Positions 1 to 14,598 of a DNA stretch of 64,000 nucleotides are shown here, piece by piece. Every line of letters starts with the position of its first letter. Position 1 is the stretch's first letter. The translations under genes and the position numbers were made by a program. Below the pieces are notes generated by a model. That model saw only the letters and a list, made by a program, of their open reading frames with translations. It made no database searches and was not told the DNA's origin. Location of the stretch: the IMG/VR virus record IMGVR_UViG_3300042879_006196, positions 62,001 through 126,000 of that record; one strand, 5' to 3'.

Positions 1-99
1 CGAGAATTGCTCGCTGTTGCCAGAGAAGGTGGCTCAATCGGCACCTTTTACAATACAAGGCTTCGACCCTTGCCTATAACAAAGTCAGATTCTTTCTGA
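1..99 (+). CDS. 3' end of a KTSC-like small protein, paralog of 5836..6093
   Basis: Frame 1 reads RELLAVAREGGSIGTFYNTRLRPLPITKSDSF*, which matches SELLTVATEGGSLGTFYNSVVRKLPIEK in 5836..6093. Confidence 0.7.
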   Translation, partial: RELLAVAREGGSIGTFYNTRLRPLPITKSDSF

Positions 100-102
100 A
101 TG

Positions 103-125
103 ATAGGGGAATAAAATCCCCTATC
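103..125 (+). terminator. Hairpin GATAGGGG...CCCCTATC after the KTSC-like gene
   Basis: Inverted repeat; a related TAGGGGA-TAAAT-TCCCCTA hairpin occurs twice at about 6100-6175, after the paralog. Confidence 0.5.
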
Positions 126-165
126 TAAAATTTTCCAGGTTTAACAAAACCTGATTATAATGAAT

Positions 166-307
166 GTAAGAACGAAAGTTCTACAAGGTGACGACTCTGC
201 ACCTTGAGGGGAACGGAATTGCCCCTTGAAACCAGTAGCTCCTGTCAAATGGAGTGACGACATCTATTAAGTGCTTTGGGAATAGTTTCTAGAAAGAGGC
301 TATTCCC
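166..307 (+). ncRNA. Candidate structured ncRNA occupying a promoter cassette
   Basis: Starts at the ATG-equivalent position after TATAAT(156-161), has no ORF at that position, and folds into five consecutive hairpins. Confidence 0.55.
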
Positions 308-330
308 CCTCCAAGAGCCCCGCCGCCCGC

Positions 331-366
331 TTTTTCCAGGTTTAACACAATCTGATTATAATAGAT
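331..366 (+). promoter_or_regulatory. Representative early sigma70-type promoter for a leaderless transcript
   Basis: TTTCCA-N18-TATAAT-AGAT-ATG; no room for a Shine-Dalgarno; internal dyad CAG(G)TT-N6-AA(T/C)CTG. Confidence 0.8.
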
Positions 367-765
367 ATGACATTAGAACAACTGCAACAAATCTTTCCAG
401 GTGCTACGGCTGATACTTGGCATCAGCACCCAAACGGTGGTGGATGGGTGCAAAATACTGCAAAGGTATATGAAACTGCTTGGGTTGGCAAAGATGCCGT
501 AGTGTATGGGGATGCTGTGGTGCTTTGGAATTCTTCTATATCGGGGAATGCTAGGGTGTTGGCTGACGGGTATGGGTCTGGAGGAGAAGAAATGACCTTA
601 GAAAAAGCGTTGGAGCGGATTGAGTTCCTTGAGAACGCTCTGAACGGAGCGATTGGTTCCTGCATTAAGGATGAGGAATGTGATTTCACGAAAAAGCCAG
701 AACTGGTGGAATACATTAAGCAAAACTGGTTGAATGCATTAATCAAAGAAATAGATAATGAATAA
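367..765 (+). CDS. Hexapeptide-repeat-like protein fused to a second small protein (internal start at 592)
   Basis: WHQHPNGGGWV...VYETAWVGKDAVVYGDAVV pattern; GGAGGAG precedes ATG 592, whose peptide duplicates the 758 ORF. Confidence 0.75.
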   Translation: MTLEQLQQIFPGATADTWHQHPNGGGWVQNTAKVYETAWVGKDAVVYGDAVVLWNSSISGNARVLADGYGSGGEEMTLEKALERIEFLENALNGAIGSCIKDEECDFTKKPELVEYIKQNWLNALIKEIDNE

Positions 766-964
766 CATGACATTAGAAGAGGCATTGAAACGGATTGAGT
801 TCCTTGAGAACGCTTTAGACCAAGCCATTGACTTGGCAGTAATCCGAACTTGGGATTTAGGATATATTGTAGCAGGTTATGGTGGTGATAATGCAACTTA
901 TGACGTTAGAGAGCCACAAAGAGCTTTTCCTGCTCTAGTGGAATACTTGGAGGGGAAGGAGTGA
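758..964 (+). CDS. Hypothetical cassette protein
   Basis: ORF overlapping the previous stop; N-terminus paralogous to the 592 peptide. Confidence 0.7.
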   Translation: MNNMTLEEALKRIEFLENALDQAIDLAVIRTWDLGYIVAGYGGDNATYDVREPQRAFPALVEYLEGKE

Positions 965-1029
965 AAACCCCCTCCAAGAGTTTCGCTGCCCGCTTTTTCC
1001 AGGTTTAACACAATCTGATTATAATAGAT

Positions 1030-1248
1030 GTGATGTTACCTTACGAATATCTCAACGAAGTGCTTCAAAAGGGCGTTTGCCCAAATTGCAACAAGCCCAG
1101 CAAGTCTATTGACTTCCAATTCTCATATGGCGTGTACGCTGGTGTGATGTGCACTAAATGTGCCATCAATGGCTACAGAGACTCCTGCGGTCACAAGCGA
1201 CCAATGGGCACTAGAGCCGAGTACGAGTCCTTTGGAGAGGATTATTAA
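1030..1248 (+). CDS. Small Cys-rich (zinc-binding) cassette protein
   Basis: GTG at the cassette start position; CPNC and CTKC motifs. Confidence 0.75.
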   Translation: MMLPYEYLNEVLQKGVCPNCNKPSKSIDFQFSYGVYAGVMCTKCAINGYRDSCGHKRPMGTRAEYESFGEDY

Positions 1249-1311
1249 TCCCCCTCCAAAGGGGCGGCAGATCGTTTTTTCCAGGTTTAACACAATCTGA
1301 TTATAATAGAT

Positions 1312-1515
1312 ATGAGCAGTGATACAAAAGAATCGTTGGTTGTACTATCTCTCCTCGGAGGATTTGTTCCGTTGGTCTTTGCAATAGTGTGTCTCCCCAA
1401 GTATACGGAAGCCTCACTTTATTGGCTGAAGTTCGCCATGACCGCTTCAATTGTGTGTCCCGCAGTTGGATTTACAATTGACAGAGTGTGGAGAAAAGTC
1501 ACAAAAAATGACTAG
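1312..1515 (+). CDS. Small two-TM membrane protein
   Basis: Leaderless cassette ATG; two hydrophobic segments. Confidence 0.75.
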   Translation: MSSDTKESLVVLSLLGGFVPLVFAIVCLPKYTEASLYWLKFAMTASIVCPAVGFTIDRVWRKVTKND

Positions 1516-1723
1516 CATCTATGAAGAACTCAAAAACGCTGGTGTGGAAATCTCCAACTGGCAAAGTGACCTTTATTGTCCAAAAAATGCCCAGACTATC
1601 CCAATAGTCAAAAAGTATGAAAAAGAACACTATATTTCTACTTTCAAAAACTTAAACGACGGTCTCACTTGGTATGATGTTGCTTTTGCTTACGACCCTT
1701 ACTGGTCAAAATTAGGAAAGTAA
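1508..1723 (+). CDS. Hypothetical cassette protein (likely start MTSIYEE)
   Basis: ATG 1508 overlaps the previous gene end; part of ORF 1451..1723. Confidence 0.7.
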   Translation: MTSIYEELKNAGVEISNWQSDLYCPKNAQTIPIVKKYEKEHYISTFKNLNDGLTWYDVAFAYDPYWSKLGK

Positions 1724-1786
1724 TTCCCCTCCAAGGGGGCGGCAGACCATTTTTTCCAGGTTTAACACAATCTGATTATAATAAAT

Positions 1787-1981
1787 ATGAGCAATAAAAA
1801 GGCTTCAATCAAAAAACGAATAACAATGAATGGCAAAACATCAATTGTTGAAATAGATGTCTTCCAGCCCACTGGACATATGTCTTACTCAGGATTCGGT
1901 GCTCATGGAAGACAAAATCGAAAATCCGAGCGTCGCCAAAATCGAGCTGAAGCTCGCAACGTAATGAGAGGTGCATTTTAA
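1787..1981 (+). CDS. Small very basic protein
   Basis: Leaderless cassette ATG; GFGAHG followed by an Arg-rich tail. Confidence 0.75.
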   Translation: MSNKKASIKKRITMNGKTSIVEIDVFQPTGHMSYSGFGAHGRQNRKSERRQNRAEARNVMRGAF

Positions 1982-2106
1982 TGATTGACCCAAATGAATA
2001 CAAAGATGACTCTATATCTTTTGATGACGGTTCTCAATTAATTCTGCCCGACATAGAAATTTCTGATGATAATTGGGCATTTGGCACTCTAGATGTTGAA
2101 ACTTGA
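1981..2106 (+). CDS. 41-aa highly acidic peptide
   Basis: TAATG coupling with the previous gene; MIDPNEYKDDSISFDDGSQLILPDIEISDDNWAFGTLDVET (12 D/E, 1 K). Confidence 0.55.
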   Translation: MIDPNEYKDDSISFDDGSQLILPDIEISDDNWAFGTLDVET

Positions 2107-2127
2107 TGTATAATACTACAGTTCAGC

Positions 2128-2200
2128 CTCTCCATAGCTCAGTGGATAGAGCAACTGCCTTCTAAGCAGTAGGTCGGAGGTTCGAGTCCTCTTGGGGAGG
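2128..2200 (+). tRNA. tRNA-Arg(UCU), no encoded CCA
   Basis: Acceptor CTCTCCA/TGGGGAG, D arm GCTC, anticodon arm ACTGC-CTTCTAA-GCAGT, T arm GGAGG-TTCGAGT-CCTCT. Confidence 0.95.
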
Positions 2201-2271
2201 CTGAGCAATCCCCCTCCAAGAGGGTGGCAGCCCGTTTTTTCCAGGTTTAACATTTCCTGATTATAATAGAT

Positions 2272-2373
2272 ATGGAGTTACTAAAAAACATAGTGGTTGT
2301 TCTTGAAGCATTAGCAGCCATTGGGATTTTCATCGTTCTTGCTAAGATTTGGAAGCAAAACAGCAATCGCTAA
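2272..2373 (+). CDS. 33-aa single-TM peptide
   Basis: Leaderless cassette ATG; MELLKNIVVVLEALAAIGIFIVLAKIWKQNSNR. Confidence 0.7.
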   Translation: MELLKNIVVVLEALAAIGIFIVLAKIWKQNSNR

Positions 2374-2386
2374 ATCGCCACTTCCC

Positions 2387-2412
2387 CAGCTCCCCTCGAT
2401 TGAGGGGAGCTG
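2387..2412 (+). terminator. Perfect 11-bp hairpin
   Basis: CAGCTCCCCTC-GATT-GAGGGGAGCTG. Confidence 0.55.
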
Positions 2413-2477
2413 TTCCCCCTCCAAAGGCTTCGCCGCCCGCTTTTTCCAGGTTTAACACAATCTGATTATAATAGATA

Positions 2478-2735
2478 TTGAAAGTGATAGAAAAAACAAA
2501 GAAAGAAACAATAAAGTCTAGGAAAAAATATACAATTAATTATATTCAAGACCTTGGTAATCTTACTTTTATTGTTGAAGAAAAATTCAGTAGCTTAAAA
2601 AAAGCTATTGAGAGGGTGCAAGAAAAAGAAGCATTTTGGATACAAGAGTGTTTTGATGAAGATTTAGGAATATTTGAGCTCAAGCCCCGAATCGCTGGAG
2701 AGCTTGAATTACGATATTCTCTCAGATTTGAGTAA
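2478..2735 (+). CDS. Hypothetical cassette protein
   Basis: TTG start 1 nt from the canonical cassette start position. Confidence 0.65.
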   Translation: MKVIEKTKKETIKSRKKYTINYIQDLGNLTFIVEEKFSSLKKAIERVQEKEAFWIQECFDEDLGIFELKPRIAGELELRYSLRFE

Positions 2736-2811
2736 CACTCTGAAACTTAACCCCTCCAAAGGCTTCGCCGCCCGCTTTTTCCAGGTTTAACACAATCTGA
2801 TTATAATAAAT

Positions 2812-3231
2812 ATGACACTGAAAGATTTTGAGAAAGAGCTTCGCGTAAAAGTTTTAGCAACTTGGGGAACTGTTATAAAGCCTGCAAACTATGGAAAGTT
2901 TACAGATATTAAAGTGAGAGTTTCTTCAGGTGATGAGTTGTTTATTGTTGAAGTTAACTGGGAACATGATGAAAAGTGCTTCAATAAGTATGCTGATTTC
3001 ACAGGCGAATATTCAACGGATGTAATGCTCGATGAAACTGATATTTATGCTTCAGGGTGTTTTGCTCAATTCAAAATACATAGAAAAAGAAGAACTTTTG
3101 AAATAGGTTTAGTAGGCGAGCATTTTAATGATTTTGAATACTTAGGTTTCAAAAATCTAAAGTATGGAGTGCAATTGTATTTCGAAAATAGACAAGCTCT
3201 AGGTTCTTTCAGAGAATTTAGTGATGTTTAA
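2812..3231 (+). CDS. Hypothetical cassette protein
   Basis: Leaderless ATG; ORF fills the cassette exactly. Confidence 0.8.
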   Translation: MTLKDFEKELRVKVLATWGTVIKPANYGKFTDIKVRVSSGDELFIVEVNWEHDEKCFNKYADFTGEYSTDVMLDETDIYASGCFAQFKIHRKRRTFEIGLVGEHFNDFEYLGFKNLKYGVQLYFENRQALGSFREFSDV

Positions 3232-3292
3232 CCCCTCCAAAGGGGAGGCAGATCGTGTTTTCCAGGTTTAACACAATCTGATTATAATAGAT

Positions 3293-3490
3293 ATGAGCAA
3301 CGTGTTTGAACAAAGATTCTACAATGGTCAGGGTAATACATCAATTGAAAAATGCCGATACTTTGGAGAGTCTCATGCTTCTTATGAATGGCATAGACAA
3401 CTTGACCCAAGATGGACAGATGAACAGCAAAAAGCATATCATGAAGGCTATGATATGGTTCTTGAGGAATTGAAGAGAAACAAAAATTAA
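3293..3490 (+). CDS. Hypothetical cassette protein
   Basis: Leaderless ATG; ORF fills the cassette; AYHEGY-type C-terminus. Confidence 0.8.
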   Translation: MSNVFEQRFYNGQGNTSIEKCRYFGESHASYEWHRQLDPRWTDEQQKAYHEGYDMVLEELKRNKN

Positions 3491-3554
3491 ATCCCCCTCC
3501 AAGGGGGCGGCAGATCGTGTTTTCCAGGTTTAACATTTTCGAATTATAATAGAT

Positions 3555-3890
3555 ATGACACCAAGAGAAATTAAAAAGTTGATTGAGCGAATGGCAACTA
3601 ATGGTTTTACCTTAGTAGATGGATTCTTTCACCGACACATATACACTGGTAGAAAGTTGTATAGTGACGTGGTTAAGTTTGAGGATGCCTTGAATTGGCT
3701 CGAAAAGCCTGTTCTCACTGAAAGAATAAGAGACGAAGATATTATGGTGTTTATAAAAAATTATGGCAACGATGTAGCCGCTCGCTATGATGGTTGTTTA
3801 ATTTATGCGTCTATTAGTGGCTTTCGTGACAAAAGACTCACAGATGAACAAGTGGACGCCATTCATAAACAATGGCTTAAGTTACGCTGA
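3555..3890 (+). CDS. Hypothetical cassette protein
   Basis: Leaderless ATG; ORF fills the cassette. Confidence 0.8.
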   Translation: MTPREIKKLIERMATNGFTLVDGFFHRHIYTGRKLYSDVVKFEDALNWLEKPVLTERIRDEDIMVFIKNYGNDVAARYDGCLIYASISGFRDKRLTDEQVDAIHKQWLKLR

Positions 3891-3954
3891 TTTCCCCTCC
3901 AAAGGGGCGGCAGATCGTGTTTTCCAGGTTTAACACAATCTGATTATAATAGAT

Positions 3955-4581
3955 ATGATTCAATACAAGCAGTCGCAAAAACTAAAGAAGCTTCAATTGG
4001 AAAAGAACTTTGCAGAAGCAAACTGGCAAGAAGTTGAAGCGGAATGTAAAATCATCGACTCAGAAAATTCGGCGTTGCATAAAGAGAAATCTCAAGAACT
4101 TCAAAATCATATCAAAGCTATTGAATCTATTTGCAATCTGACTAAAGCCCAAAGTAAATACTTGAATGGATTCTATGCTCCAATCGTTTATACAAGAGAA
4201 GTTGATACTCTGCAAAGAATAAAAAGCAACTACGAAGGCATAATCAAGGAAAAAGAAAAACAAGAAATGTTGGCTAAACAGCAAGAATATCAAGCTAATT
4301 TGCAACAAAAAGCAATTATCTTTTTACTTGAAAATGGTAAAGTTCTTGGACAAGATTTTACTTTGGAAAATGCAATAAATTCTGCTAATAAATTGAAGTT
4401 TAAGCAACTAATTAAAGAGAAACTAGAAAGTTCAAGTGAATTCTCTTTTGACGGTGAAACTTGTGATGAAGATTGTGGTTGGGATGGTATGGGTCACAGA
4501 TGTTTCTGTGGTTGCCGAAGAGTAGATTGGGAATATAACGGCAATTTTGACAATATGTATATTTATGCCCAAGCATACTAA
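3955..4581 (+). CDS. Coiled-coil protein with C-terminal Cys cluster
   Basis: Leaderless ATG; CDEDCGWDG..RCFCGCRRV. Confidence 0.8.
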   Translation: MIQYKQSQKLKKLQLEKNFAEANWQEVEAECKIIDSENSALHKEKSQELQNHIKAIESICNLTKAQSKYLNGFYAPIVYTREVDTLQRIKSNYEGIIKEKEKQEMLAKQQEYQANLQQKAIIFLLENGKVLGQDFTLENAINSANKLKFKQLIKEKLESSSEFSFDGETCDEDCGWDGMGHRCFCGCRRVDWEYNGNFDNMYIYAQAY

Positions 4582-4643
4582 CCCCCTCCAAAGGGGAGGC
4601 AGATTGTTTTTTCCAGGTTTAACACAATCTGATTATAATAGAT

Positions 4644-4814
4644 ATGAGCGACAAAGAATTGAAGCTGATGATTGCTGGACAATGCCTCACGGGGTTGCTT
4701 GCAAATAATTCTCCTTGGAATAACGAATTAAGCCGACCAGCGCTTGTAGACTTTGCTTGGGGGGTTGCAACAGCTTTAATGGAGTTAAGTAAAGAGGAAG
4801 AGGAGAAGAAATGA
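4644..4814 (+). CDS. 56-aa phage protein of the AGQALxGLLAN...A..LM type
   Basis: Leaderless ATG; IAGQCLTGLLAN...AWGVATALM; ATGA overlap with the next gene. Confidence 0.7.
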   Translation: MSDKELKLMIAGQCLTGLLANNSPWNNELSRPALVDFAWGVATALMELSKEEEEKK

Positions 4815-5059
4815 CGCTAAGAGAGTGCATCAAACAAGAACTTAACTATCCCCGTAAAATGCATGGAAGTATTGTTGTTTACCGTGTAAGGCGGGATGGG
4901 GCAACTACATACACCTGTGCGGAGTGGGCTTTGCTTGAAAACAGACCACCCGTTGCAGAAATTTGGCGGGATTGGGGGAACAAAGAATGGCAAGTAAGTT
5001 ATTATAGAAAGCCAACAAAGCAAGAAAAAAAGGTGATAGATGCCTTTAGTTGTTTGTAG
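4811..5059 (+). CDS. Hypothetical cassette protein
   Basis: GAGGAG SD and ATGA coupling. Confidence 0.75.
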   Translation: MTLRECIKQELNYPRKMHGSIVVYRVRRDGATTYTCAEWALLENRPPVAEIWRDWGNKEWQVSYYRKPTKQEKKVIDAFSCL

Positions 5060-5202
5060 GGGAAGGATTAAGTCCCTCCCCCTCCAAGAGGGTGGCAGCC
5101 CGTTTTTTCCAGGTTTAACATTTTCTGATTATAATAATTATTTACAAATTTTTTTTCAAAAAATATTTTTTCCAGGTTTAACATTTTCTGATTATAATAG
5201 AT

Positions 5203-5637
5203 GTGATACACATTCACGCAACCAATCTAGGAGTCAGGTTTGGAACCTCTGACACTACTCTCGTTACTGCAAAAGACTATGATTGGGACTTCCAATTGTC
5301 TACCGAAGCCACTTCCAACGATAAGGACGTTATCGTGTTAAAAATGCCCGAAAACATGGCATTGGAACTATTCTGGGAATACTGCCGTAAAGAAGCATCG
5401 AGCCACCTTCTTTTGCACATTAGTGCTCTATTAGACGAAACTCCAAAAGAGCACATTGTTGAACAACTCCGTTGGTCAGTTGAAATACTGACTGATGATA
5501 GAAATAACAAAGTATTTGGGCGGGTAATCAAGCGTTCCGAGGCGTACATGGCAAAAGATATTGAGAATTTGCTTTTCTATAATCAAGAGCTTAAACTTTA
5601 TGCTCTATTGGATGAGGCTTATTTTTTCCAGGTTTAA
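5203..5637 (+). CDS. Hypothetical cassette protein
   Basis: GTG at the cassette start position; the stop lies inside the next promoter copy. Confidence 0.75.
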   Translation: MIHIHATNLGVRFGTSDTTLVTAKDYDWDFQLSTEATSNDKDVIVLKMPENMALELFWEYCRKEASSHLLLHISALLDETPKEHIVEQLRWSVEILTDDRNNKVFGRVIKRSEAYMAKDIENLLFYNQELKLYALLDEAYFFQV

Positions 5638-5835
5638 CATTTCCTGATTATAATAATTGCCATAGAAAAAAACTATGGCAATTATATCTAGTTTGCAAAA
5701 ATCTATGACAAATTTTCCAGGTTTAACAAAACCTGATTATAATATAGTTGCAAAAAATTAAAAAATTTTTTGGCGGCGGAGCCTTTGGAGGGGAAAAAAA
5801 TTTTCCAGGTTTAACATTTTCTGATTATAATAGAT

Positions 5836-6093
5836 ATGGTTAAGAACCATAAAATCAAAAAAAGCAAAGGCAAGGTAACCATCCTCCCTGAAGCTTCTTT
5901 CGTCGAACGACTTGAACTGAAAGGCAATAACCTGAAGTTCAAAATGAAATCAGGTGATAGCGTATATTCTACCGTTTTGAATCCTGAAAACATTTCAGAA
6001 TTGCTTACCGTAGCAACCGAAGGCGGTAGCCTTGGCACTTTTTATAATTCCGTTGTAAGGAAGTTGCCGATAGAAAAGGTAGCAACCTTCTAG
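5836..6093 (+). CDS. KTSC-like small protein
   Basis: Leaderless ATG; ELL.VA..GGS.GTFYN..VR resembles the KTSC C-terminal motif. Confidence 0.55.
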   Translation: MVKNHKIKKSKGKVTILPEASFVERLELKGNNLKFKMKSGDSVYSTVLNPENISELLTVATEGGSLGTFYNSVVRKLPIEKVATF

Positions 6094-6385
6094 ACAATTT
6101 AGGGGATAAATTCCCCTATTCCATTTTTTCCAGTTTTAACAAATTCTAGACAGAATAGGGGATAAATTCCCCTATTCCATTTTTTCCAGGTTTAACACAA
6201 TCTGAATTATAATGTATATACAGATTGTGGGGTGGGGTTTTTATTTTGCTATAGATAGCGAAAGGGGCACCTTTTTTTATTTTCAGATTGTGTCGTAGCC
6301 TATATATAGGGAGGGGGGGGAGGTTTTTCTCACACAATCTGACCCCCCCTTCTTTTTTCTAGGCCCCTCGTTTACACCGACACTA

Positions 6386-6503
6386 CACAATCTAAAAACC
6401 ACAATCTGAGAATCACAATCTAAAAACCACAATCTAAAAACCACAATCTAAAAATCACAATCTAAAAACCACAATCTGAGAATCACAATCTGAGAATCAC
6501 AAT
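6386..6503 (+). repeat. 14-bp tandem repeat with CACAATCT core, 8 full copies plus 1 partial
   Basis: CACAATCT at 6386, 6400, 6414, 6428, 6442, 6456, 6470 and 6484; partial at 6498. Confidence 0.95.
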
Positions 6504-6858
6504 TTTTTAGTTTATTTTTTTTATTCTCGGATCATAGGGGGGGTGTTTAAATTTAGGGGGGGTGTTTTAAAAAGGGTGTATAGATATATATACATATAGG
6601 GGTAAATTTTCGTATAATTAATAATGGTATACACGATTTTTCTTTTTCTAGCTATATATACAAATCTTTGTTTACTAGAAGCCTTGATACAATACAAAAC
6701 TTTTGTTTCTCGCTTAGGGTCATATTTAATGATTAAATATTTAAATTTCTTATCGTGGTTAAATTTCTTTACATACACAATCTGTCTTTTAAAGGGATCA
6801 CATTTGATAAATTTTTGATTAAAAAATAATTCCAGAAACACTGTTTTATGCATTTCCC

Positions 6859-6891
6859 CGTAATCTAAGAGCACAAGGATTTCGAATATAA
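6859..6891 (+). pseudogene. Remnant C-terminus of a Trp-repeat paralog
   Basis: Reads RNLRAQGFRI*, matching the ends RNLQAQGFPIKIY* and HNLKAQGFPM*. Confidence 0.6.
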
Positions 6892-6909
6892 ATTTAGTAA
6901 TTTAAGATT

Positions 6910-8466
6910 GTGTGGTATAGATATTGCAGATTAATTATAGCTGGCAAAGAACATATAATTAAAAAGATCATTGGTTATTTTAGAGAACAAGGGATTGGAC
7001 AAGTTGACTTAGATAATCTCCAACACAATCTGAATACCTTAGATAAGAATAATTTATTACCAGCGAGAATAGAACCTAGAAAAGATGGTGTATTTTTTGG
7101 TGATAGATTGTATGAAGATTTTTTAGAATTTCAAGAAATAGTGGATGGATTATATGGAGAATATAAATTAAGACAAAAAACAAAAGAACAAAAGAAATTA
7201 AGAGAAGAAAAAATAGAATTTGTTCCAGGTAAAACATCTGTTTATCCATGTAATAGTGTAAATGATGCGATCAAATATGGGGTTGGTACAGATTGGTGTA
7301 TTTCTCAACCTGGTAATGGAAATTATGATTCATATAGATCCGACTATCAATCTACATTTTATTATGTACAAGATAACACTAGACAATCTGATGATCCTTT
7401 ATCTAGAGTAATGGTGGATATACAAGCAAATGGTGTTGTCAAACTCACTGATATAAATAATACCACTGGTACAATAGCTGAATTTGGTACAGATTGGAAA
7501 AAGTATTTCGAGTATTTGGAAAAAAGTGGTGTAGATATTTCTCAATTTGTTAATAAACCTTTGACACAAGAAGAGATAGAAGAAAATAAGTTGATTGGTA
7601 AAGAAATAAATGATTTGGAGAAATTTGAAAAATTACCATTAGAATATAAATTCAAATACATTGGTCGTGGTCATTTATTAACGACAAAACAATTGGAGTC
7701 TATTATTAATCTTCAATCTGTTCATAGCAATGATGTAAAAAATACATTGATAAAACATTATTTAAAAACAGGAAGATCTTTACCAGCAATTCAAAAATTC
7801 ATTTTATTTGAAAGCAATCAAGGATGGAGAACAACATACATAAGAAGTAGAAAAATAGTAATAGATCAAATTAGAAAAAATTTATTGGATGACGACGAAG
7901 TAGCTCGCGAATTTCTAGATGCTGATGAAAGGGCTCTTTATGAAAATCCATTGAAATCAACAAATATTGTTGTGAAAAATATTGAAGATTTTGATTTTTT
8001 ATTAACTAAAGGTGTAAGTTTAAATCAGTTTAATTGGTCTAGTGTTTCTCAGATTCGTAATTTATCTGAAGATTTTATAAGAGAATATAAAGATAAAGTG
8101 GATTGGCTTGATATTTCTACTTATCCAAGATTATCTGAAGATTTTATCAGAGAATTTCAAGATAAGGTGTACTGGTGGATAATTTCTCAATATCAAACAT
8201 TATCTGAAGATTTTATAAGAGAATTTCAAGATAAGGTAAAATGGGGAACAATTTCTTACACACAGGAATTATCTGAAGATTTTATAAGAGAATTTAAAGA
8301 TAAGGTGGATTGGGAGAAAATTTCCAGATATCAAAAATTATCTGAAGATTTTATAAGAGAATTTAAAGATAAGGTGGATTGGTATTATATACGGTGGAAC
8401 GAGAATATTTCCGATGAAACCAAACGCAATCTGCAAGCACAAGGATTTCCTATAAAAATTTACTAA
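6910..8466 (+). CDS. MWY-start protein with KYGxGTxWC domain and 5 C-terminal 23-aa Trp repeats (paralog 1)
   Basis: LSEDFIREFxDKVxWxxISxxQx units at a 69-nt period (8062, 8131, 8200, 8269, 8338). Confidence 0.9.
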   Translation: MWYRYCRLIIAGKEHIIKKIIGYFREQGIGQVDLDNLQHNLNTLDKNNLLPARIEPRKDGVFFGDRLYEDFLEFQEIVDGLYGEYKLRQKTKEQKKLREEKIEFVPGKTSVYPCNSVNDAIKYGVGTDWCISQPGNGNYDSYRSDYQSTFYYVQDNTRQSDDPLSRVMVDIQANGVVKLTDINNTTGTIAEFGTDWKKYFEYLEKSGVDISQFVNKPLTQEEIEENKLIGKEINDLEKFEKLPLEYKFKYIGRGHLLTTKQLESIINLQSVHSNDVKNTLIKHYLKTGRSLPAIQKFILFESNQGWRTTYIRSRKIVIDQIRKNLLDDDEVAREFLDADERALYENPLKSTNIVVKNIEDFDFLLTKGVSLNQFNWSSVSQIRNLSEDFIREYKDKVDWLDISTYPRLSEDFIREFQDKVYWWIISQYQTLSEDFIREFQDKVKWGTISYTQELSEDFIREFKDKVDWEKISRYQKLSEDFIREFKDKVDWYYIRWNENISDETKRNLQAQGFPIKIY

Positions 8467-8504
8467 TTTTTGAACAAATCATATTTTTTATCGTATAATA
8501 ATAA

Positions 8505-8579
8505 TGCGGGGTGGAGCAGAGGTAGCTTGTCTGGCTCATAACCAGAAGGTCGTGGGTTCAAATCCCTCCCCCGCACCCA
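8505..8579 (+). tRNA. tRNA-Met(CAU), initiator-like scaffold, CCA encoded
   Basis: TGCGGGGTGGAGCAG..GGTAGCT.GTCTGG-CTCATAA-CCAGA..GTGGGTTCAAATCCC..CCCCGCA-C-CCA. Confidence 0.9.
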
Positions 8580-8580
8580 A

Positions 8581-8654
8581 GCTCCGATCGTCTAGCGGTT
8601 TAGGACATCGCTCTTTCACGGCGAAGATCACGGGTTCGAATCCCGTTCGGAGTA
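8581..8654 (+). tRNA. tRNA-Glu(UUC), no encoded CCA
   Basis: GCTCCGA/TCGGAGT acceptor; TCGCT-CTTTCAC-GGCGA anticodon arm; ACGGG-TTCGAAT-CCCGT T arm. Confidence 0.93.
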
Positions 8655-8677
8655 ATTAAAAAAGATTGGAATAAAAT

Positions 8678-9424
8678 ATGTATTTACCTTTATTAGCTTT
8701 TTCCCTTTTCACACAATCTACTTTAGATGACACACAATGTAGAAAGGCATTAAATGAAATTCTCCCTATGATGCGCACAACCAATGCTATGAGTTTTAGA
8801 TTAGAGGGGGAGAATGAATACAAGGGGTTTTTTACAAAATATTCGGGCAGTTTTAAATGGTTCAAAAATGAATCTGTGATAAAGTCAGAGTTAAAGTTAT
8901 CGCGAGATCAGATTGGCTTACAAAGAATTGTGGCTGATGGTAAAAAGATTTGGGCACACAATCTGCAAAGAAATGAATATACAGTGGCTCGTTATTCTTT
9001 AGAATTATCTGTGGGCGAAGATTACATGAAAAGATATATAAATGGTGTAAAGTACCCTGTGCTAGGGATGGGGCAACATTTAATGACACTTGCAGATCAG
9101 GTAGGTTTTGTATCACCTTCTCTCAAAGACTGGATTGGTGGTATTGAGTGGCAGGGAAAATTAGAAATAGATAAAAATAATTCTTTAAGAATTGTGAAGA
9201 GAATTTATCAGATTGTGGCTGATTATCGTTATGTGGTTTGGGAGCTTGAATCATTTGATGAGGGTGTCACATTTAATTTTTCAAGCATAAAGATTTACAA
9301 TAAAAGTTTTGATGGGTCAACCACCACCACATATCTTTATTTGGACGATTGTGTGGGTGCGGATCATTTAGGATTTAAATTTGTTCCTCCATCTGGCAGC
9401 AAAGTATTATGGATAAAAGATTGA
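8678..9424 (+). CDS. Secreted LolA/DUF2092-like beta protein
   Basis: Hydrophobic N-terminus; IVADGKKIWAHN...NEYT and C-terminal FKFVPPSGSKV motifs typical of the LolA fold. Confidence 0.6.
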   Translation: MYLPLLAFSLFTQSTLDDTQCRKALNEILPMMRTTNAMSFRLEGENEYKGFFTKYSGSFKWFKNESVIKSELKLSRDQIGLQRIVADGKKIWAHNLQRNEYTVARYSLELSVGEDYMKRYINGVKYPVLGMGQHLMTLADQVGFVSPSLKDWIGGIEWQGKLEIDKNNSLRIVKRIYQIVADYRYVVWELESFDEGVTFNFSSIKIYNKSFDGSTTTTYLYLDDCVGADHLGFKFVPPSGSKVLWIKD

Positions 9425-9460
9425 GAAGGAAGATTTTTTCTCATTCTATAATACTATACT

Positions 9461-9883
9461 ATGAACAAACACAATCTATTAAACAAAATAGCTTCAATTG
9501 CTACAGAACTCGACGTAAAAGGTTTCACAAAGGAAGCAAAGACCTTGGATAATGTGTTAATTAGAGTGGCGGATATTAATCCTGAAGAATATTGGGATAA
9601 AGAATGGAGAAGAGAGTTTCGTGAAGAAGAAAGAACTATTGTTCCAACAAAAAAAGTTTGGGAGTATGTTAAAAGCGCACACACTAAAGAATTAGAATAC
9701 GCACTTGAAGGTGGCGGCTTAGACGTGAAAAATTTTGCTGAATTTTGCTGGTCTTTAAAAGATGAAAATTTAAACAACATGATCAAAAATAGCCCAGATC
9801 TTAATTGGGCATGGTTGGAAGAAGCATTTATAGATCATTTGGAATATATTCAACATTCTAAGTTTGACTCAGAACCAGAATGA
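9461..9883 (+). CDS. Hypothetical protein with shared N-terminal IASxATELD.KG..KEA tag
   Basis: ORF; tag shared with the genes at 9976 and 20778. Confidence 0.8.
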   Translation: MNKHNLLNKIASIATELDVKGFTKEAKTLDNVLIRVADINPEEYWDKEWRREFREEERTIVPTKKVWEYVKSAHTKELEYALEGGGLDVKNFAEFCWSLKDENLNNMIKNSPDLNWAWLEEAFIDHLEYIQHSKFDSEPE

Positions 9884-10590: not shown

Positions 10591-12891
10591 GTGTGGTATA
10601 GATATTGCAGATTAATTATAGCTGGAAAAGAACATATAATTAAAAATGTTATTAATTATTTTAGAGAACAAGGGGAGTCTGAAGTAAATCTAAATGAAAT
10701 CTCACAGAAACTAAATGTTTTAGATAAATCACAAAAATTGCCAATTATTGAAAGAAGAAAAAAAAGTATTTTTTTTAATAATCAAGAATTCACCAAATTT
10801 CTTGACTTTTCAGAAAAAGTGGATCGTTTATTTTCTGAACATTTACGAAATGAAAAAACAAAAGAACAAAAAAAAATACAGAAAGAAGAAAAAACAGAAT
10901 TCATTCCAGGCAAAATATCTGTTTATCCATGCAAAAATGTAAATGATACAATCAAATATGGCGCTGGTACAAGTTGGTGTGTTTCACAGCCTGGTAATAA
11001 CATGTATGATAGTTACAGAAATCAAAGTGCGTCCACATTTTATTACATTCAAGATGGAACAAGAGATTCTAGTGATCCATTATCAAGGGTAATGTTAGAT
11101 GTACAAGATGGCGATGAAATTACATTAACTGACACAGATAATGACACTGGCGCTATAGCTGAATTTGGCACAAATGTAGATGCTTATTTAGATTATTTAG
11201 AAAACAATGGCGTAAACACTGCTCAGTTTGTCAATAAACCTTTGACAAATGAGGAAAGAGAAGAATTTCGAATATTAGGTCAAAGAAATAATGATTTAGA
11301 ATGGTTTGAAAATTTAAGTTTAGATTATAAATTCAAATATATTGGAAGAGGTCATCGTTTAACAGATGAACAGCTTTCATCAATTATAAATTTAGAATCT
11401 GTTGACACAAAAAAGATTGCATTAGAATTAATTAATGATTATGTTAACACAGGCTTAAATTTACCTTTAAATCAACAAAAAATTCTATTTGAAATTAATC
11501 CACAAATTCAAAAAACCTATAAAAGAAGAAGAGCAATTGCAATTGAAGCAATTAAGAAATATTATTTTAATAATACATATGAATTAAAAAATTATGCTTT
11601 ACAAAATAAAGATCTTGAATTGATTGATTCAATTATTGAAGAAAAAGGTATTGAAGCATTCAAAAATGCGAGGGCAGCTCAGCCTGTAATTGAATATTTA
11701 TTATCAAAAGGCTTGGACCCTAGTTATGTGAAATGGCAAGACATGTATTTAGAAAAATTATCAGAAGACTTTATAATCAAATACATCAACTTTTTAGACA
11801 TTAAGCGTATATCTCACTATCAAAAACTATCTGAAGATTTTATAAGAAAATATTCAGATCTTGTTGATTGGCGAAATATTTCATATTTTCAAAAATTGTC
11901 AGAAAATTTTATTGAAGAATTTAAAGATCGCGTAGATTGGCAAGAAATTTCAAGCAGACAAATATTATCTGAAGATTTTATAAGAAAATTTCAAGATAAG
12001 ATAGAACAAAGCAGATCATGGTCTGAAATTACACAATATCAAAATTTATCTGAAGAATTTATGGATGAATTTCAAAATAAATTAGATTGGGAAAAACTTT
12101 CAGATTACCATGAAAATAGAAAATATGGACAGAAACTTTCAATTGAATTTCTTTTAAGGCATAAAGATAAAATTGATTGGGAAACATATTCACGTAAATA
12201 CGGTGCCAATATCGCTGAGGAATATTTGAGAGCTCTCAAATATTATATACACTGGGATAAAGTAAGTTATCATAATGTATCTGATGAATTTTTGTTTGAA
12301 TTTGAAAATTATATAAATTGGAAAAAAGCAGCGAGCACAAAAGAAAATATCCCTGAAATTTTACTCCGAAGACACGCTGATGATTTAAATTGGTATCATA
12401 TTTCAGCTTTCCAAACATTATCTGAAGATTTTATAAGAGATTTTGCTGATCGTTTTAATTGGGTTTTTATTTCTCAACATCAAAAATTATCTGAAGATTT
12501 TATAAGAGAATTTAAAGATAAGGTGGATTGGTATTATATTTCTGAATATCAAACATTATCTGAAGATTTTATAAGAGAATTTCAAGATAAGGTAAAATGG
12601 GGAACAATTTCTGTATATCAAAAATTATCTGAAGATTTTATAAGAGAATTTCAAGATAAGGTAGTTTGGCATTTTATTTGTAGATATCAAACATTATCTG
12701 AAGATTTTATAAGAGAGTTTCAAAATAAGGTATATTGGGCAGAAATTTCTCAAGATCAAAAATTATCTGAAGATTTTATAAGAGAATTTCAAGATCGTGT
12801 AAAATTGCATTATTTATTGCGAAATGAAAACCTTTCTGATGAAATCAAACACAATCTGCAAACAAAAGGTTATCAAATAAAACATTTTTAA
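10591..12891 (+). CDS. MWY-start Trp-repeat protein (paralog 2, about 15 repeats)
   Basis: Same N-terminus and KYGAGTSWC domain as paralog 1; long repeat array. Confidence 0.9.
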   Translation: MWYRYCRLIIAGKEHIIKNVINYFREQGESEVNLNEISQKLNVLDKSQKLPIIERRKKSIFFNNQEFTKFLDFSEKVDRLFSEHLRNEKTKEQKKIQKEEKTEFIPGKISVYPCKNVNDTIKYGAGTSWCVSQPGNNMYDSYRNQSASTFYYIQDGTRDSSDPLSRVMLDVQDGDEITLTDTDNDTGAIAEFGTNVDAYLDYLENNGVNTAQFVNKPLTNEEREEFRILGQRNNDLEWFENLSLDYKFKYIGRGHRLTDEQLSSIINLESVDTKKIALELINDYVNTGLNLPLNQQKILFEINPQIQKTYKRRRAIAIEAIKKYYFNNTYELKNYALQNKDLELIDSIIEEKGIEAFKNARAAQPVIEYLLSKGLDPSYVKWQDMYLEKLSEDFIIKYINFLDIKRISHYQKLSEDFIRKYSDLVDWRNISYFQKLSENFIEEFKDRVDWQEISSRQILSEDFIRKFQDKIEQSRSWSEITQYQNLSEEFMDEFQNKLDWEKLSDYHENRKYGQKLSIEFLLRHKDKIDWETYSRKYGANIAEEYLRALKYYIHWDKVSYHNVSDEFLFEFENYINWKKAASTKENIPEILLRRHADDLNWYHISAFQTLSEDFIRDFADRFNWVFISQHQKLSEDFIREFKDKVDWYYISEYQTLSEDFIREFQDKVKWGTISVYQKLSEDFIREFQDKVVWHFICRYQTLSEDFIREFQNKVYWAEISQDQKLSEDFIREFQDRVKLHYLLRNENLSDEIKHNLQTKGYQIKHF

Positions 12892-12900
12892 TTTAAGATT

Positions 12901-14598
12901 GTGTGGTATAGATATTGCAGATTAATTATAGCTGGCAAAGAACATATAATTAAAAATGTCATTAATTATTTTAGACAAAAAGGCGAAATTGAAGACAATC
13001 TAAATGAAATTTATCGCAAGCTTTTGGATCTTGACAAATCCAACAAAATACAAAATATTGGAATAATAGAAGATAAAGTTAATTTTAATGATAATTCATT
13101 CAATAATTTTATAGATTTTTCAGAAAAAATAGATGAATTACATACAAATTATTTTTGGTTGAAGCAACAAGAAAAATTAAAAAAGGAACAAAAAGAATTA
13201 CAAAAAAATGAAATAGAATTTGTTCCAGGTAAAATATCTGTTTATCCATGTAATGATGTAAGTGATACAATCAAATATGGAGCTGGTACAAGTTGGTGTA
13301 TTTCTAGACCTGGTAATCGCATGTATGATTCATATAGATCCAGCAATCAATCCACATTTTATTATGTGCAAGATGGAACTAGGCAATCTGATGATCCATT
13401 ATCAAGGGTAATGATAGATAGGCAGAAAAATGGTGTTGTCAAGCTCACTGATATTAATAACCGTACTGGCACAATAGCTGAGTTTGGTACAGATTGGCAA
13501 GCATATTTTGACTATTTGGAAAGCAAAGGCGTAAAAACTTCTCAATTTGTTAATAAACCTAGAACACAAGAAGAAATTGAAGAGACTAAAAAATTAGGCA
13601 CAAAAAAAGACAATTTAGTATGGTTTAAAAACTTAACAAACGATGAAAAATCAAAATATATTGGAAGAGGTCACCTATTAACTAATAAACAATTAGAATA
13701 TTTATTATCAAGAGATGATATAGGCAAATTATTAATTCCTCAATATTTAAATACTGGTGTTAGTTTGCCTCCAAAACAAAAAAAAATGTTATTTTCTAAC
13801 AAACAATATGAAAATACATATTATAAAAATATTGAAATTGCACATCAAGAAATTAAAAAATACTGCTTTTCAAAACACAGTGATAATATTGCTTGTGAGT
13901 TAGAAATTTTAATAAATGCATTAGAAACAAATCAATTTGAACTTGTAGAAGAATATCAAAATAGAATTAATTTGTTAGACATTGAAAACTTTGAACCCAT
14001 TCCTAATTTTTATGATGATGAAGATGATGAAGATGAAGATGATGATGAAGATGATGAAGAGGTTATTTTTATCGACGGGCGAGCTTATACTTTTAATTTG
14101 AGTGTTAATATTTCAGTGGAAATGGCTGAATTTTTATACGAAATAGGAGCTGCTGAAGACAATTTAAATGAGATCTGCCACATGCGAGGATTATCTGAAG
14201 ATTTTATAAGAGAATTTCAAGATAAGGTGAATTGGAGGGCAGTATCTGAATATCAAACATTATCTGTAGATTTTATAAGAGAATTTCAAAATAAGATAGA
14301 AGAAACAAGATCTTGGGATAGAATTTCTGGATATCAAAAATTATCTGAAGATTTTATAAGAGAATTTAAAGATAAGTTGAGTTGGGATAGAATTTCTGGA
14401 TATCAAAAATTATCTGAAGATTTTATAAGAGAATTTAAAGATAAGTTGAGTTGGGGGAAAATTTCTTATTTCCAAAAATTATCTGAAGATTTTATAAGAG
14501 AATTTCAGGATAAAGTGAATTGGGAGTATATACAGAGCAACGAAAATATATCTGATGAAACCAAACACAATCTGAAAGCGCAAGGATTTCCGATGTAA
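12901..14598 (+). CDS. MWY-start Trp-repeat protein (paralog 3, 5 repeats, acidic tract)
   Basis: Same architecture; DDEDDEDEDDDEDDEE tract. Confidence 0.9.
   Translation: MWYRYCRLIIAGKEHIIKNVINYFRQKGEIEDNLNEIYRKLLDLDKSNKIQNIGIIEDKVNFNDNSFNNFIDFSEKIDELHTNYFWLKQQEKLKKEQKELQKNEIEFVPGKISVYPCNDVSDTIKYGAGTSWCISRPGNRMYDSYRSSNQSTFYYVQDGTRQSDDPLSRVMIDRQKNGVVKLTDINNRTGTIAEFGTDWQAYFDYLESKGVKTSQFVNKPRTQEEIEETKKLGTKKDNLVWFKNLTNDEKSKYIGRGHLLTNKQLEYLLSRDDIGKLLIPQYLNTGVSLPPKQKKMLFSNKQYENTYYKNIEIAHQEIKKYCFSKHSDNIACELEILINALETNQFELVEEYQNRINLLDIENFEPIPNFYDDEDDEDEDDDEDDEEVIFIDGRAYTFNLSVNISVEMAEFLYEIGAAEDNLNEICHMRGLSEDFIREFQDKVNWRAVSEYQTLSVDFIREFQNKIEETRSWDRISGYQKLSEDFIREFKDKLSWDRISGYQKLSEDFIREFKDKLSWGKISYFQKLSEDFIREFQDKVNWEYIQSNENISDETKHNLKAQGFPM

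What the first reader, a model, noticed from the sequence alone, without database searches (positions are those of the whole stretch)
6214..6600. Iteron-like tandem array with G/C tracts: candidate origin, nucleation site or genome terminus
Seen: 8.5 copies of a 14-bp unit with a CACAATCT core (6386-6503). Motif copies on the opposite strand lie upstream (6222, 6285), and there are long G and C runs (6308-6323, 6343-6349) and repeated GGGGGGTGTTT(T)AAA (about 6537-6573). The region marks the boundary between the cassette array and the AT-rich gene block. Inference: a replication origin, a loading site for the motif-binding protein, or the end of a terminal repeat that carries the early region.
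Basis: partly seen in the sequence, partly recalled or inferred. Interest (0 to 1): 0.6.

Follow-up and report, generated by a model that had tools for sequence, protein, structure and literature searches.

The report
Motif array ending phage early region
The tandem array is real: it is a pile-up of an 8-base word that this giant lake-water phage carries about 390 times, and it sits in a conserved non-coding module that closes the early-gene block, probably at the inner edge of a long terminal repeat rather than at a replication origin.

Summary
The window holds 8 exact copies and 1 degenerate copy of CACAATCT at a 14-bp period (6386-6503).

The window lies in a 347-kb jumbo-phage record from lake metagenomes. 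CACAATCT is its most over-represented 8-mer (389 copies; 203 vs 10.5 expected outside the early region). It occurs on both strands, mostly inside genes, and its sites are conserved in relatives (17/26 vs about 12% background). It also lies in the spacer of 29 of 78 early promoters.

The array sits in a conserved untranslated module after the last early promoter. Related lineages carry arrays of the same core at the same place but with other periods (11, 18 and 29 bp). One lineage has a single unit plus an HNH gene.

Contig depth in three runs drops about 2-fold between 6129 and 6214.

Best reading: a multi-copy binding cluster for an unidentified motif-specific factor at the end of the early region, probably the inner edge of a long terminal repeat (like T5 repeat region 3).

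A classical iteron origin is poorly supported: no skew signal, no initiator gene nearby, and the motif is not origin-restricted.

The parts
6088..6199 (+). Two tandem 56-bp modules, each holding a terminator-like hairpin (TAGGGGA..TCCCCTA plus a T run) and an early-promoter upstream half. The depth step falls in or just after this stretch.
   Evidence: TRF period 56 x 2.0, 92%. Terminator-like sites at 6100-6118 and 6153-6177. Depth is about 2x up to 6129 and about 1x from 6214.
6183..6213 (+). Last early-type promoter (TTTCCA, then a spacer holding CACAATCT, then TATAAT). Unlike 53 of its 78 paralogues it has no ATG 4 nt after the -10 element and reads into terminators.
   Evidence: Sequence. 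Promoter family list and geometry.
6196..6342 (.). Four single motif copies (6196 +, 6222 -, 6285 -, 6333 +) that form inverted pairs: 6196-6207 with 6218-6229 around the -10 element, and 6283-6293 with 6332-6342.
   Evidence: I22, I23, I16.
6261..6278 (+). Conserved terminator-like block T1 (AAAGGGGC.. followed by a T run).
   Evidence: Invariant columns in the four-lineage alignment A1.
6298..6364 (+). Conserved CTATATAG box, then a G8/C7 hairpin (about 12 bp) followed by a T run. In this genome the loop holds one motif copy. It is likely the main intrinsic terminator of the early block.
   Evidence: Inverted repeat I2. RNA fold -54.4 kcal/mol, z -2.25. The G run, C run and T run are conserved in relatives.
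6386..6503 (+). The array: 8 exact copies and 1 degenerate copy of CACAATCT at a 14-bp period. The spacers are AAAAAC, GAGAAT or AAAAAT. All copies have the same orientation.
6503..6528 (.). T-rich tract directly after the array.
   Evidence: Sequence. No stable fold in 6500-6625.
6535..6570 (+). Two copies of TAGGGGGGGTGTTT(T)AA. Related G7-T-GGG-TAAAA elements flank the array site in every related lineage.
   Evidence: D9. Relatives.
6589..6818 (+). Next promoter-like site (TATACA, 18 nt, TATAAT at 6589-6618) with an ATG 5 nt after the -10 element. It starts a 64-aa hydrophobic ORF (6624-6818) and so begins the next transcription unit.
   Evidence: An analogous TCGTATA(A/T)T promoter plus small ORF is seen in relatives.

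Best explanation
The array is a local amplification of the phage's genome-wide recognition word (A)CACAATCT(G). It sits in a conserved untranslated module of about 0.4 kb: terminator T1, a CTATATAG box, a G-run/C-run terminator hairpin, G7-T elements, then the array.

This module ends the block of about 78 co-oriented early promoters. It is followed by the promoter of the next transcription unit.

I take the array to be a multi-copy binding cluster for an unidentified, lineage-specific DNA-binding factor. It could act in loading, titration or as a barrier. The same factor would have operator-like sites in the spacer of a subset of early promoters and about 200 conserved sites inside later genes. 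What seems to matter is the number of same-oriented sites, not their helical geometry.

The module coincides with a 2x to 1x depth step. It therefore most likely marks the inner edge of a long direct terminal repeat that carries early genes. That makes it the functional analogue of the repeat-rich untranslated region at the inner end of the T5 terminal repeat.

Shown:
- the anatomy of the region;
- the motif statistics;
- conservation of the module and of individual motif sites;
- recurrent arrays in relatives;
- the depth step.

Inferred:
- that a protein binds the motif;
- that the step is a terminal-repeat edge;
- what the cluster does (early shut-off or insulation, injection pause, or concatemer processing).
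For: Motif statistics:
- 389 copies in 347 kb. Outside the early region there are 203 against 10.5 expected, the top 8-mer.
- The two strands are about equal, 103 vs 100 (my tally of the per-bin counts).
- 189 of 217 copies lie inside ORFs, in all frames.
- The spacing is Poisson-like.
- Sites are kept at homologous positions in relatives, 17/26 against 8-21% for random 8-mers.
- The excess is shared by two relatives at about 82% DnaE identity (53 and 92 copies, with reversed-word controls of 2 each). It is absent from the 51% identity clade.

Operator-like placement:
- 29 of 78 early promoters hold the word in the spacer, and 12 have an inverted copy just upstream.
- Relatives also have the word in the spacer, shifted by 2 nt.

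Array site:
- It is one of only two 12-copy clusters in the genome.
- The pre-array module is alignable across four lineages.
- Arrays of the same core recur at the same place with different periods and spacers. L126 has an 11-bp period x 9.5 and L120 x 4.3. L123, L124 and L125 have 18- and 29-bp periods with 6 copies. This genome has a 14-bp period x 8.4.

Depth step:
- Three unique contig pieces left of 6129 have depths 20.4/27.2/19, 22.1/14/15.9 and 13.5/13.4/19.7 in three runs. Pieces from 6214 rightwards average about 10.1/8.6/8.3.
- The ratios are 2.2, 2.0 and 1.9, with no overlap between the two groups (Mann-Whitney p = 1e-5).
- Right-hand pieces of 43-44% G+C are still at 1x, so G+C does not explain it.

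Precedents:
- A terminal repeat was inferred from 2x depth in phage CBB (PMC5259590) and in Streptomyces cluster BE1 phages (PMC5764925).
- XacN1 has a 66-kb DTR (PMC5852040).
- The T5 untranslated repeat region 3, with nine direct repeats plus palindromes, straddles the end of the left terminal repeat (bioRxiv 10.1101/866236).
Against: - No binding protein was found. Pfam and PHROGs searches on flanking ORFs gave nothing.
- The depth evidence is k-mer depth of Logan contigs, not raw reads. Only one edge was seen. A co-occurring strain that shares only the early block could mimic it.
- The G001/L119 lineage keeps only one degenerate unit at the array site, next to an inserted HNH gene. A long array is therefore not indispensable.
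- The step lies about 170-250 bp left of the array, not in it.
- A dispersed word inside genes is unusual for a transcription factor.
Confidence: 0.45

Rival explanations
1. Iteron-type replication origin. An initiator binds the 14-bp repeats and melts the adjacent T-rich tract, helped by transcription from the last early promoter.
For: - Direct repeats next to a 25-nt T-rich tract, in a gap between transcription units.
- A promoter reads toward the array.
- G-rich transcript segments could favour R-loops.
Against: - Cumulative GC skew has no inflection at genome position 68.4 kb.
- The repeat core occurs 389 times genome-wide and in promoters.
- No initiator-like gene is adjacent. The DnaE and RecJ genes lie 36-43 kb away.
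- The periods 10, 11, 14, 18 and 29 bp in different arrays and lineages share no helical register.
- The array collapses to one unit in G001/L119.
- Two or three terminators shield it from the promoter.
- No DnaA box is present.
Confidence: 0.12
2. Cis-acting signal for the genome ends themselves. It could be a terminase or concatemer-processing site, or an injection-pause site, at the terminal-repeat boundary. The array and G-tract elements would be read by packaging or ejection machinery rather than by a regulator.
For: - A depth step lies beside the module.
- G7-T elements and hairpins are conserved on both sides of the array site in all lineages.
- All early promoters point the same way, as in genomes that enter the cell from one end.
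- The T5 iss region is built alike (10.1101/866236).
- The closest annotated homologues of TerL (23-27% identity) include roughly 130-kb Streptomyces phages. Phages of that kind (cluster BE1) have 11-kb terminal repeats (PMC5764925). I did not confirm that the matched phages belong to that cluster.
Against: - The motif is dispersed over the whole genome and sits in promoter spacers, which a packaging signal need not do.
- Termini were not observed.
- The second 12-copy cluster (genome 33,194-33,498) lacks the G-tract elements.
Confidence: 0.15
3. Chi-like signal. The word is read on single strands by a host or phage helicase-nuclease. Dispersed copies protect the genome or promote recombination, and a tandem cluster raises the chance of recognition.
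For: - It is an asymmetric 8-mer with about 20-fold excess inside genes on both strands and Poisson-like spacing.
- Function appears insensitive to array period, while orientation within arrays is uniform.
- The complement AGATTGTG is G/T-rich, as known Chi sequences are (own knowledge).
Against: - Placement in promoter spacers and as inverted pairs around -35 and -10 elements has no Chi rationale.
- There is no orientation skew along the genome.
- The host and its nuclease are unknown.
- A scan of bacterial genomes for triple clusters returned only unrelated repeats.
Confidence: 0.1
4. Slippage-prone minisatellite with no function of its own. A single functional motif copy at this site expands and contracts neutrally.
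For: Copy number among relatives ranges from 1 to 9.5, and the periods differ. A natural variant with one unit exists in two assemblies.
Against: - Arrays arose independently at least three times at the same place, with different unit structures but always the same core and orientation.
- A second 12-copy cluster exists elsewhere.
- Arrays of other words do not accumulate here.
Confidence: 0.1

Closest known systems
Phage T5 left-terminal-repeat 'repeat region 3' / injection stop signal (Davison, bioRxiv 10.1101/866236)
   Same: - Both are untranslated, repeat-dense regions at the end of the pre-early or early gene block.
- Both straddle or abut the inner end of a long terminal repeat.
- Both hold about nine direct repeats plus inverted repeats and palindromes.
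- Both have a partner repeat cluster some kb away in inverted orientation.
- Both have an HNH gene inserted in some relatives.
- In both, the region is more conserved than the neighbouring ORFs.
   Different: - T5 has eight DnaA boxes. None is present here.
- Here the repeated core is a phage-wide word with about 390 copies.
- Two-step injection and the terminal repeat are not demonstrated here.
Long direct terminal repeats that carry early genes (SPO1 13 kb, T5 10 kb, CBB 22 kb, XacN1 66 kb, Streptomyces BE1 11 kb; PMC5852040, PMC5259590, PMC5764925)
   Same: - An early block of small genes.
- A roughly 2-fold depth plateau ending sharply, which is the criterion used for CBB and the BE1 phages.
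- A jumbo genome.
   Different: Only one edge was seen, in contig depth. The length of the repeat is unknown, and no read-start pile-ups were available.
Short-repeat arrays SRL/SRR next to the T7 terminal repetition (own knowledge of Dunn and Studier 1983; not checked here)
   Same: Arrays of a short word lie immediately interior to the terminal repeat, and their function is still unclear.
   Different: T7 has a 160-bp repeat and a heptamer word, and that word is not a genome-wide over-represented motif.
Iteron origins and iteron control loci (lambda ori, P1 oriR/incA, RK2; own knowledge)
   Same: Same-oriented direct repeats lie beside an A/T-rich tract. P1 incA shows that an iteron array can act by titration rather than initiation.
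   Different: - The units here are shorter (14 bp, with an 8-9 bp core).
- There is no helical register.
- There is no adjacent initiator gene.
- The core is not restricted to the locus.
Chi sites and DNA uptake sequences (own knowledge)
   Same: An asymmetric 8-mer, strongly over-represented inside genes and kept at the DNA level.
   Different: Here the word also sits in promoter spacers and forms tandem arrays. No replication-oriented skew is seen.

Membership tests
Iteron-type replication origin | Three or more same-oriented direct repeats beside an A/T-rich unwinding tract | tested here: met
   8.4 x 14 bp at 6386-6503, followed by a T-rich tract at 6503-6528.
Iteron-type replication origin | Cognate initiator gene adjacent to, or containing, the iterons | tested here: not met
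   Flanking ORFs have no Rep, O or DnaA-like match in Pfam or PHROGs. Proteins of unknown function cannot be excluded.
Iteron-type replication origin | Repeat sequence confined to origin or control loci | tested here: not met
   389 copies genome-wide, including 29 promoter spacers.
Iteron-type replication origin | Compositional skew inflection or other sign of initiation at the site | tested here: not met
   Cumulative GC skew rises through genome position 68.4 kb without a turn and tracks gene strand.
Long direct terminal repeat boundary | About 2-fold read depth over the repeat with sharp edges | tested here: inconclusive
   One edge was seen between 6129 and 6214, with ratios 2.2, 2.0 and 1.9 in three runs, and G+C does not explain it. 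The measure is contig k-mer depth only, and the second edge was not examined because the reads tool is capped at one call.
Long direct terminal repeat boundary | Pile-up of read starts at the physical ends | not testable with these tools
   All runs that hold the phage are kept as contigs. Table 6 reports none, and contigs cannot show such pile-ups.
Long direct terminal repeat boundary | Early or host-takeover genes inside the repeat | tested here: met
   The high-depth side is the cassette block of small genes with early-type promoters.
T5-type injection stop region | Paired DnaA boxes within the inverted repeats | tested here: not met
   TTATNCACA occurs once in the 64-kb window, at 24200.
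T5-type injection stop region | Untranslated, repeat- and palindrome-rich region conserved among relatives at the inner end of the early block | tested here: met
Chi-like hotspot | Over-represented asymmetric oligomer with strand bias relative to replication or DNA ends | tested here: inconclusive
   The excess is met. No strand bias along the genome, 103 vs 100. The two large clusters are mutually inverted.
Chi-like hotspot | Recognition by a RecBCD/AddAB-type enzyme of the host | not testable with these tools
   The host is unknown.
Operator of a phage transcription regulator | Site overlaps core promoter elements of a regulated gene set | tested here: met
   The word lies between the -35 and -10 elements in 29 of 78 early promoters, and also in relatives.
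Operator of a phage transcription regulator | Identified cognate DNA-binding protein | tested here: inconclusive
   No candidate was found among neighbouring ORFs. The whole proteome was not scanned.

The most novel reading that the evidence does not exclude
This jumbo-phage lineage uses a private 8-base code. About 390 positionally conserved copies of CACAATCT are written into promoters and through coding sequence in every frame. The code would mark and organise the phage's own chromosome. Tandem clusters at the edges of the early or terminal-repeat block would act as nucleation or stop points, for example for staged DNA entry, early-gene silencing or end protection. A distant relative (G004) appears to carry a different dispersed word (CCCCGAT, 129 vs 23 expected). 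That hints that such codes co-evolve with a reader protein.
Probability: 0.2. Interest if true: 0.85.

Novelty: new variant of a known kind. Interest (0 to 1): 0.6.

Why it matters
Cis-acting DNA in uncultured jumbo phages is almost unexplored. This locus combines three features:
- a genome-wide, lineage-specific word under site-level purifying selection;
- arrays of that word that have evolved repeatedly at one conserved boundary;
- a probable long terminal repeat edge.

If a reader protein exists, it would define a new phage chromosome-organising or early shut-off system. It would also give a handle, by motif plus array, for finding genome ends and early regions in metagenomic phage assemblies. 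The roughly 78 early promoters with an ATG 4 nt after the -10 element also make this a natural test case for leaderless early expression.

Tried and rejected
- GC skew as an origin test gave no signal; the skew follows transcription direction.
- Rfam on the junction and on the second cluster found only the two tRNAs.
- A T7-like 'ATAGGGG' promoter idea was dropped. There are only 16 genome-wide matches and no shared context.
- An exact-pattern scan of IMG/VR for the early promoter found nothing.
- A scan for three motif copies at 14-bp spacing found only two unrelated high-G+C phage contigs with GCACAATCTGTCAC iterons, which is a coincidence.
- A scan of bacterial genomes for triple motif clusters returned 120+ unrelated tandem repeats, none similar to this phage.
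- Host search:
  - The RecJ search in bacterial genomes returned nothing.
  - HIP1 and known Chi words are not enriched.
- A search for relatives of an ORF beside the second cluster found nothing.
- Pfam and PHROGs on 20-odd neighbouring ORFs gave no DNA-binding candidate.
- TerL was found (genome about 125.9-128.0 kb). It is only 23-27% identical to annotated terminases, which is too far for a confident end-type prediction.
- Literature word searches for the motif gave only primer noise.
- G+C bias as the cause of the depth step was rejected.
- DnaA boxes are absent.
- Not done:
  - PhageTerm-type analysis was impossible because all runs are held as contigs.

Full report
**Context**

The window is bases 62,001-126,000 of a single 347,392-bp virus record. 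IMG/VR classes the record as a 'provirus', and it starts on ATG and ends on TGA, so I take it to be trimmed at gene boundaries (my inference). An independent 356,290-bp JGI contig is identical over the 20.7-kb locus fetched, which spans the region.

The record encodes a DnaE-type polymerase, RecJ, a CCA-adding enzyme and a distant large terminase. It is found in at least 18 lake-water metagenome runs.

Later genes lack Shine-Dalgarno signals and have A-rich leaders. No host was identified.

**Check of the observation**

- The array has a 14-bp period and 8.4 copies at 6386-6503.
- There are eight exact CACAATCT copies plus a degenerate ninth.
- Opposite-strand copies lie at 6222 and 6285.
- A G8 lies at 6313-6320 and a C7 at 6343-6349.
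- Two copies of TAGGGGGGGTGTTT lie at 6535-6570.
- The window holds 62 copies of the word against 3 expected.

**The word is a genome-wide feature**

CACAATCT occurs 389 times in the genome. Downstream of the early region it is the most over-represented 8-mer, at 203 against 10.5 expected, and the flanks suggest (A)CACAATCT(G).
- The two strands are equal, 103 vs 100.
- 189 of 217 copies there lie inside ORFs, in every frame.
- Copies are only 1.6-1.9 times enriched near gene ends.
- The spacing is Poisson-like.

In alignable stretches of relatives, 17 of 26 sites are kept exactly, against 8-21% for random 8-mers. The comparisons overlap in part, so the 26 sites are not all independent.

Two relatives with about 82% DnaE identity share the excess. 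Three genomes at 51% identity do not. One of those three (G004) has its own dispersed word, CCCCGAT, at 129 against 23 expected.

**Early region**

Seventy-eight promoters of one family lie almost all between genome positions 1.2 and 68.2 kb, all on the + strand. The family reads TTTCCA, an 18-nt spacer, then TATAAT. In 53 of them an ATG follows 4 nt after the -10 element, which implies leaderless messages.

Twenty-nine hold the word in the spacer, and twelve have an inverted copy just upstream. Relatives also place it in the spacer, shifted by 2 nt. This is operator-like placement.

**Anatomy of the locus**

The order of elements is as follows.
1. After the last early gene come two 56-bp terminator-plus-promoter modules (6088-6199).
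2. The last early-type promoter follows (6183-6213). It has no gene.
3. A conserved block T1 follows (6261-6278).
4. A CTATATAG box and the G8/C7 hairpin with a T run follow (6298-6364). The RNA fold is -54.4 kcal/mol, z -2.25.
5. The array follows, then a T-rich tract and the two G7-T elements.
6. A promoter-like site at 6589-6618 with an ATG at 6624 starts a small hydrophobic ORF.

The array therefore sits in a gap between transcription units and is shielded from early transcription.

It is one of only two 12-copy clusters in the genome. The other is at genome 33,194-33,498, in the opposite orientation, at the upstream side of the dense cassette block.

**Relatives**

The pre-array module aligns across four lineages, with T1, the CTATATAG box, the G run, the C run and the T run conserved. 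At the array position the lineages differ.

| Lineage | Identity of the 248-aa neighbour gene | What is at the array site |
|---|---|---|
| L123/L124/L125 | 74% | six CACAATCT copies at 29- and 18-bp periods |
| L126 | 91% | 11-bp unit (CAATCTCACAA) x 9.5 |
| L120 | 93% | the same 11-bp unit x 4.3 |
| G001/L119 | L119: 93% | one degenerate unit plus an HNH endonuclease gene nearby |

G7-T-GGG-TAAAA elements flank the site in all lineages.

Arrays of the same core and orientation have thus arisen repeatedly at one place. Their geometry is free, and a long array is not indispensable.

**Depth**

Only Logan contigs were available, and one call of 5,001 bases was used.

| Position | Run X1 | Run X3 | Run X5 |
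|---|---|---|---|
| Left piece 4622-5123 | 20.4 | 22.1 | 13.5 |
| Left piece 5173-5650 | 27.2 | 14 | 13.4 |
| Left piece 5806-6129 | 19 | 15.9 | 19.7 |
| Mean of seven pieces from 6214 to 9600 | 10.1 | 8.6 | 8.3 |
| Ratio left/right | 2.2 | 2.0 | 1.9 |

The two groups do not overlap (p = 1e-5). Right-hand pieces with 43-44% G+C are still at 1x, so G+C bias is not the cause. The step lies between 6129 and 6214.

This is the criterion used to infer terminal repeats in CBB and in the Streptomyces BE1 phages. Repeats of 10-66 kb that carry early genes are known.

Three caveats apply.
- The measure is contig k-mer depth.
- Only one edge was seen.
- A co-occurring strain that shares only the early block is not excluded.

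A 182-kb JGI contig starts at window 6530, just after the array. Contigs break at repeats anyway, so this says little.

**Interpretation**

- There is no skew inflection.
- There is no adjacent initiator gene.
- The core is not origin-restricted.
- There is no helical register.
- There are no DnaA boxes.
- One lineage has lost the array.

The data fit best a multi-copy binding cluster for a motif-specific factor at the end of the early region. That region is probably the inner edge of a long terminal repeat. The closest known analogue is T5 repeat region 3.

What the cluster does is inferred, not shown. It could act in early shut-off or insulation, as an injection pause, in concatemer processing, or as a Chi-like stop.

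**Limits**

The binding protein, the host and the physical ends remain unknown.

Noticed in passing
window 1-6213 (genome 1.2-68.2 kb; also genome 320341, 330037, 335693): About 78 near-identical early promoters, all on the + strand. In 53 of them an ATG follows exactly 4 nt after TATAAT, which implies leaderless mRNAs. From genome 44.7 kb on, each cassette ends with a CCCCCTCCAAAGGGG-type element.
   Followed up: partly
genome 14,479-32,972 (outside the window): At least 82 tandem tiny genes of 27-72 aa with a median spacing of 167 bp. All start MINTDCVE, and those codons contain AGATTGTG. The bodies hold xQVW heptad-like repeats. ATGA/TAA stop-start overlaps suggest translational coupling, and GC skew there is +0.4 to +0.5.
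   Followed up: partly
genome 33,194-33,945 (locus L096 1195-1946): The second 12-copy motif cluster is a 46-bp unit x 3.7, with two copies of the word 10 bp apart. It is followed by two terminator hairpins, a TCGTATAAT promoter and a roughly 290-nt region without an ORF that ends in a strong terminator. This may be a non-coding RNA. It has no Rfam match.
   Followed up: partly
window 6910-8466, 10591-12891, 12901-14598: A family of proteins with 23-aa (69-bp) tryptophan-containing repeats (LSEDFIREFKDKVDW...). They match PHROG 3532 and similar genes in Bacillus phage G, BpSp and Listeria phage LPJP1. In this genome one is inserted between the array and the tRNA genes, but not in relatives.
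   Followed up: partly
window 2128-2201, 8505-8579, 8581-8654: Three tRNA genes. tRNA-Arg(TCT) is embedded among the early cassettes. tRNA-Met and tRNA-Glu lie behind a TCGTATAAT-type promoter that is conserved in relatives.
   Followed up: no
L089 3914-4603 (G001) and L119 about 4690-5300: An HNH endonuclease gene is inserted on the minus strand inside the junction module, in the one lineage where the array is reduced to a single unit. L120 carries another inserted Cys/His-rich ORF between the array and the tRNAs.
   Followed up: partly
G004 (IMG/VR record of 378,848 bp; loci L098-L116): This distant relative lacks the CACAATCT excess. It has a dispersed CCCCGAT word (129 vs 23 expected), spread over the genome on both strands without flank conservation. 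It also has its own cassette block in the first 60 kb.
   Followed up: partly
whole genome, upstream of 200 long ORFs beyond 70 kb: There is no Shine-Dalgarno signal. Leaders are A-rich (A = 0.52 at position -3), a pattern reminiscent of Bacteroidota-type initiation (own knowledge). HIP1 is absent. The host is unknown.
   Followed up: partly
genome 47,234: A run of 15 G lies just before a cassette terminator, the longest homopolymer seen.
   Followed up: no
L091 11660-11730 and L092 2150-2220: Unrelated high-G+C viral contigs carry four 14-bp iterons GCACAATCTGTCAC upstream of a divergent gene pair. They share the 8-mer by coincidence.
   Followed up: no
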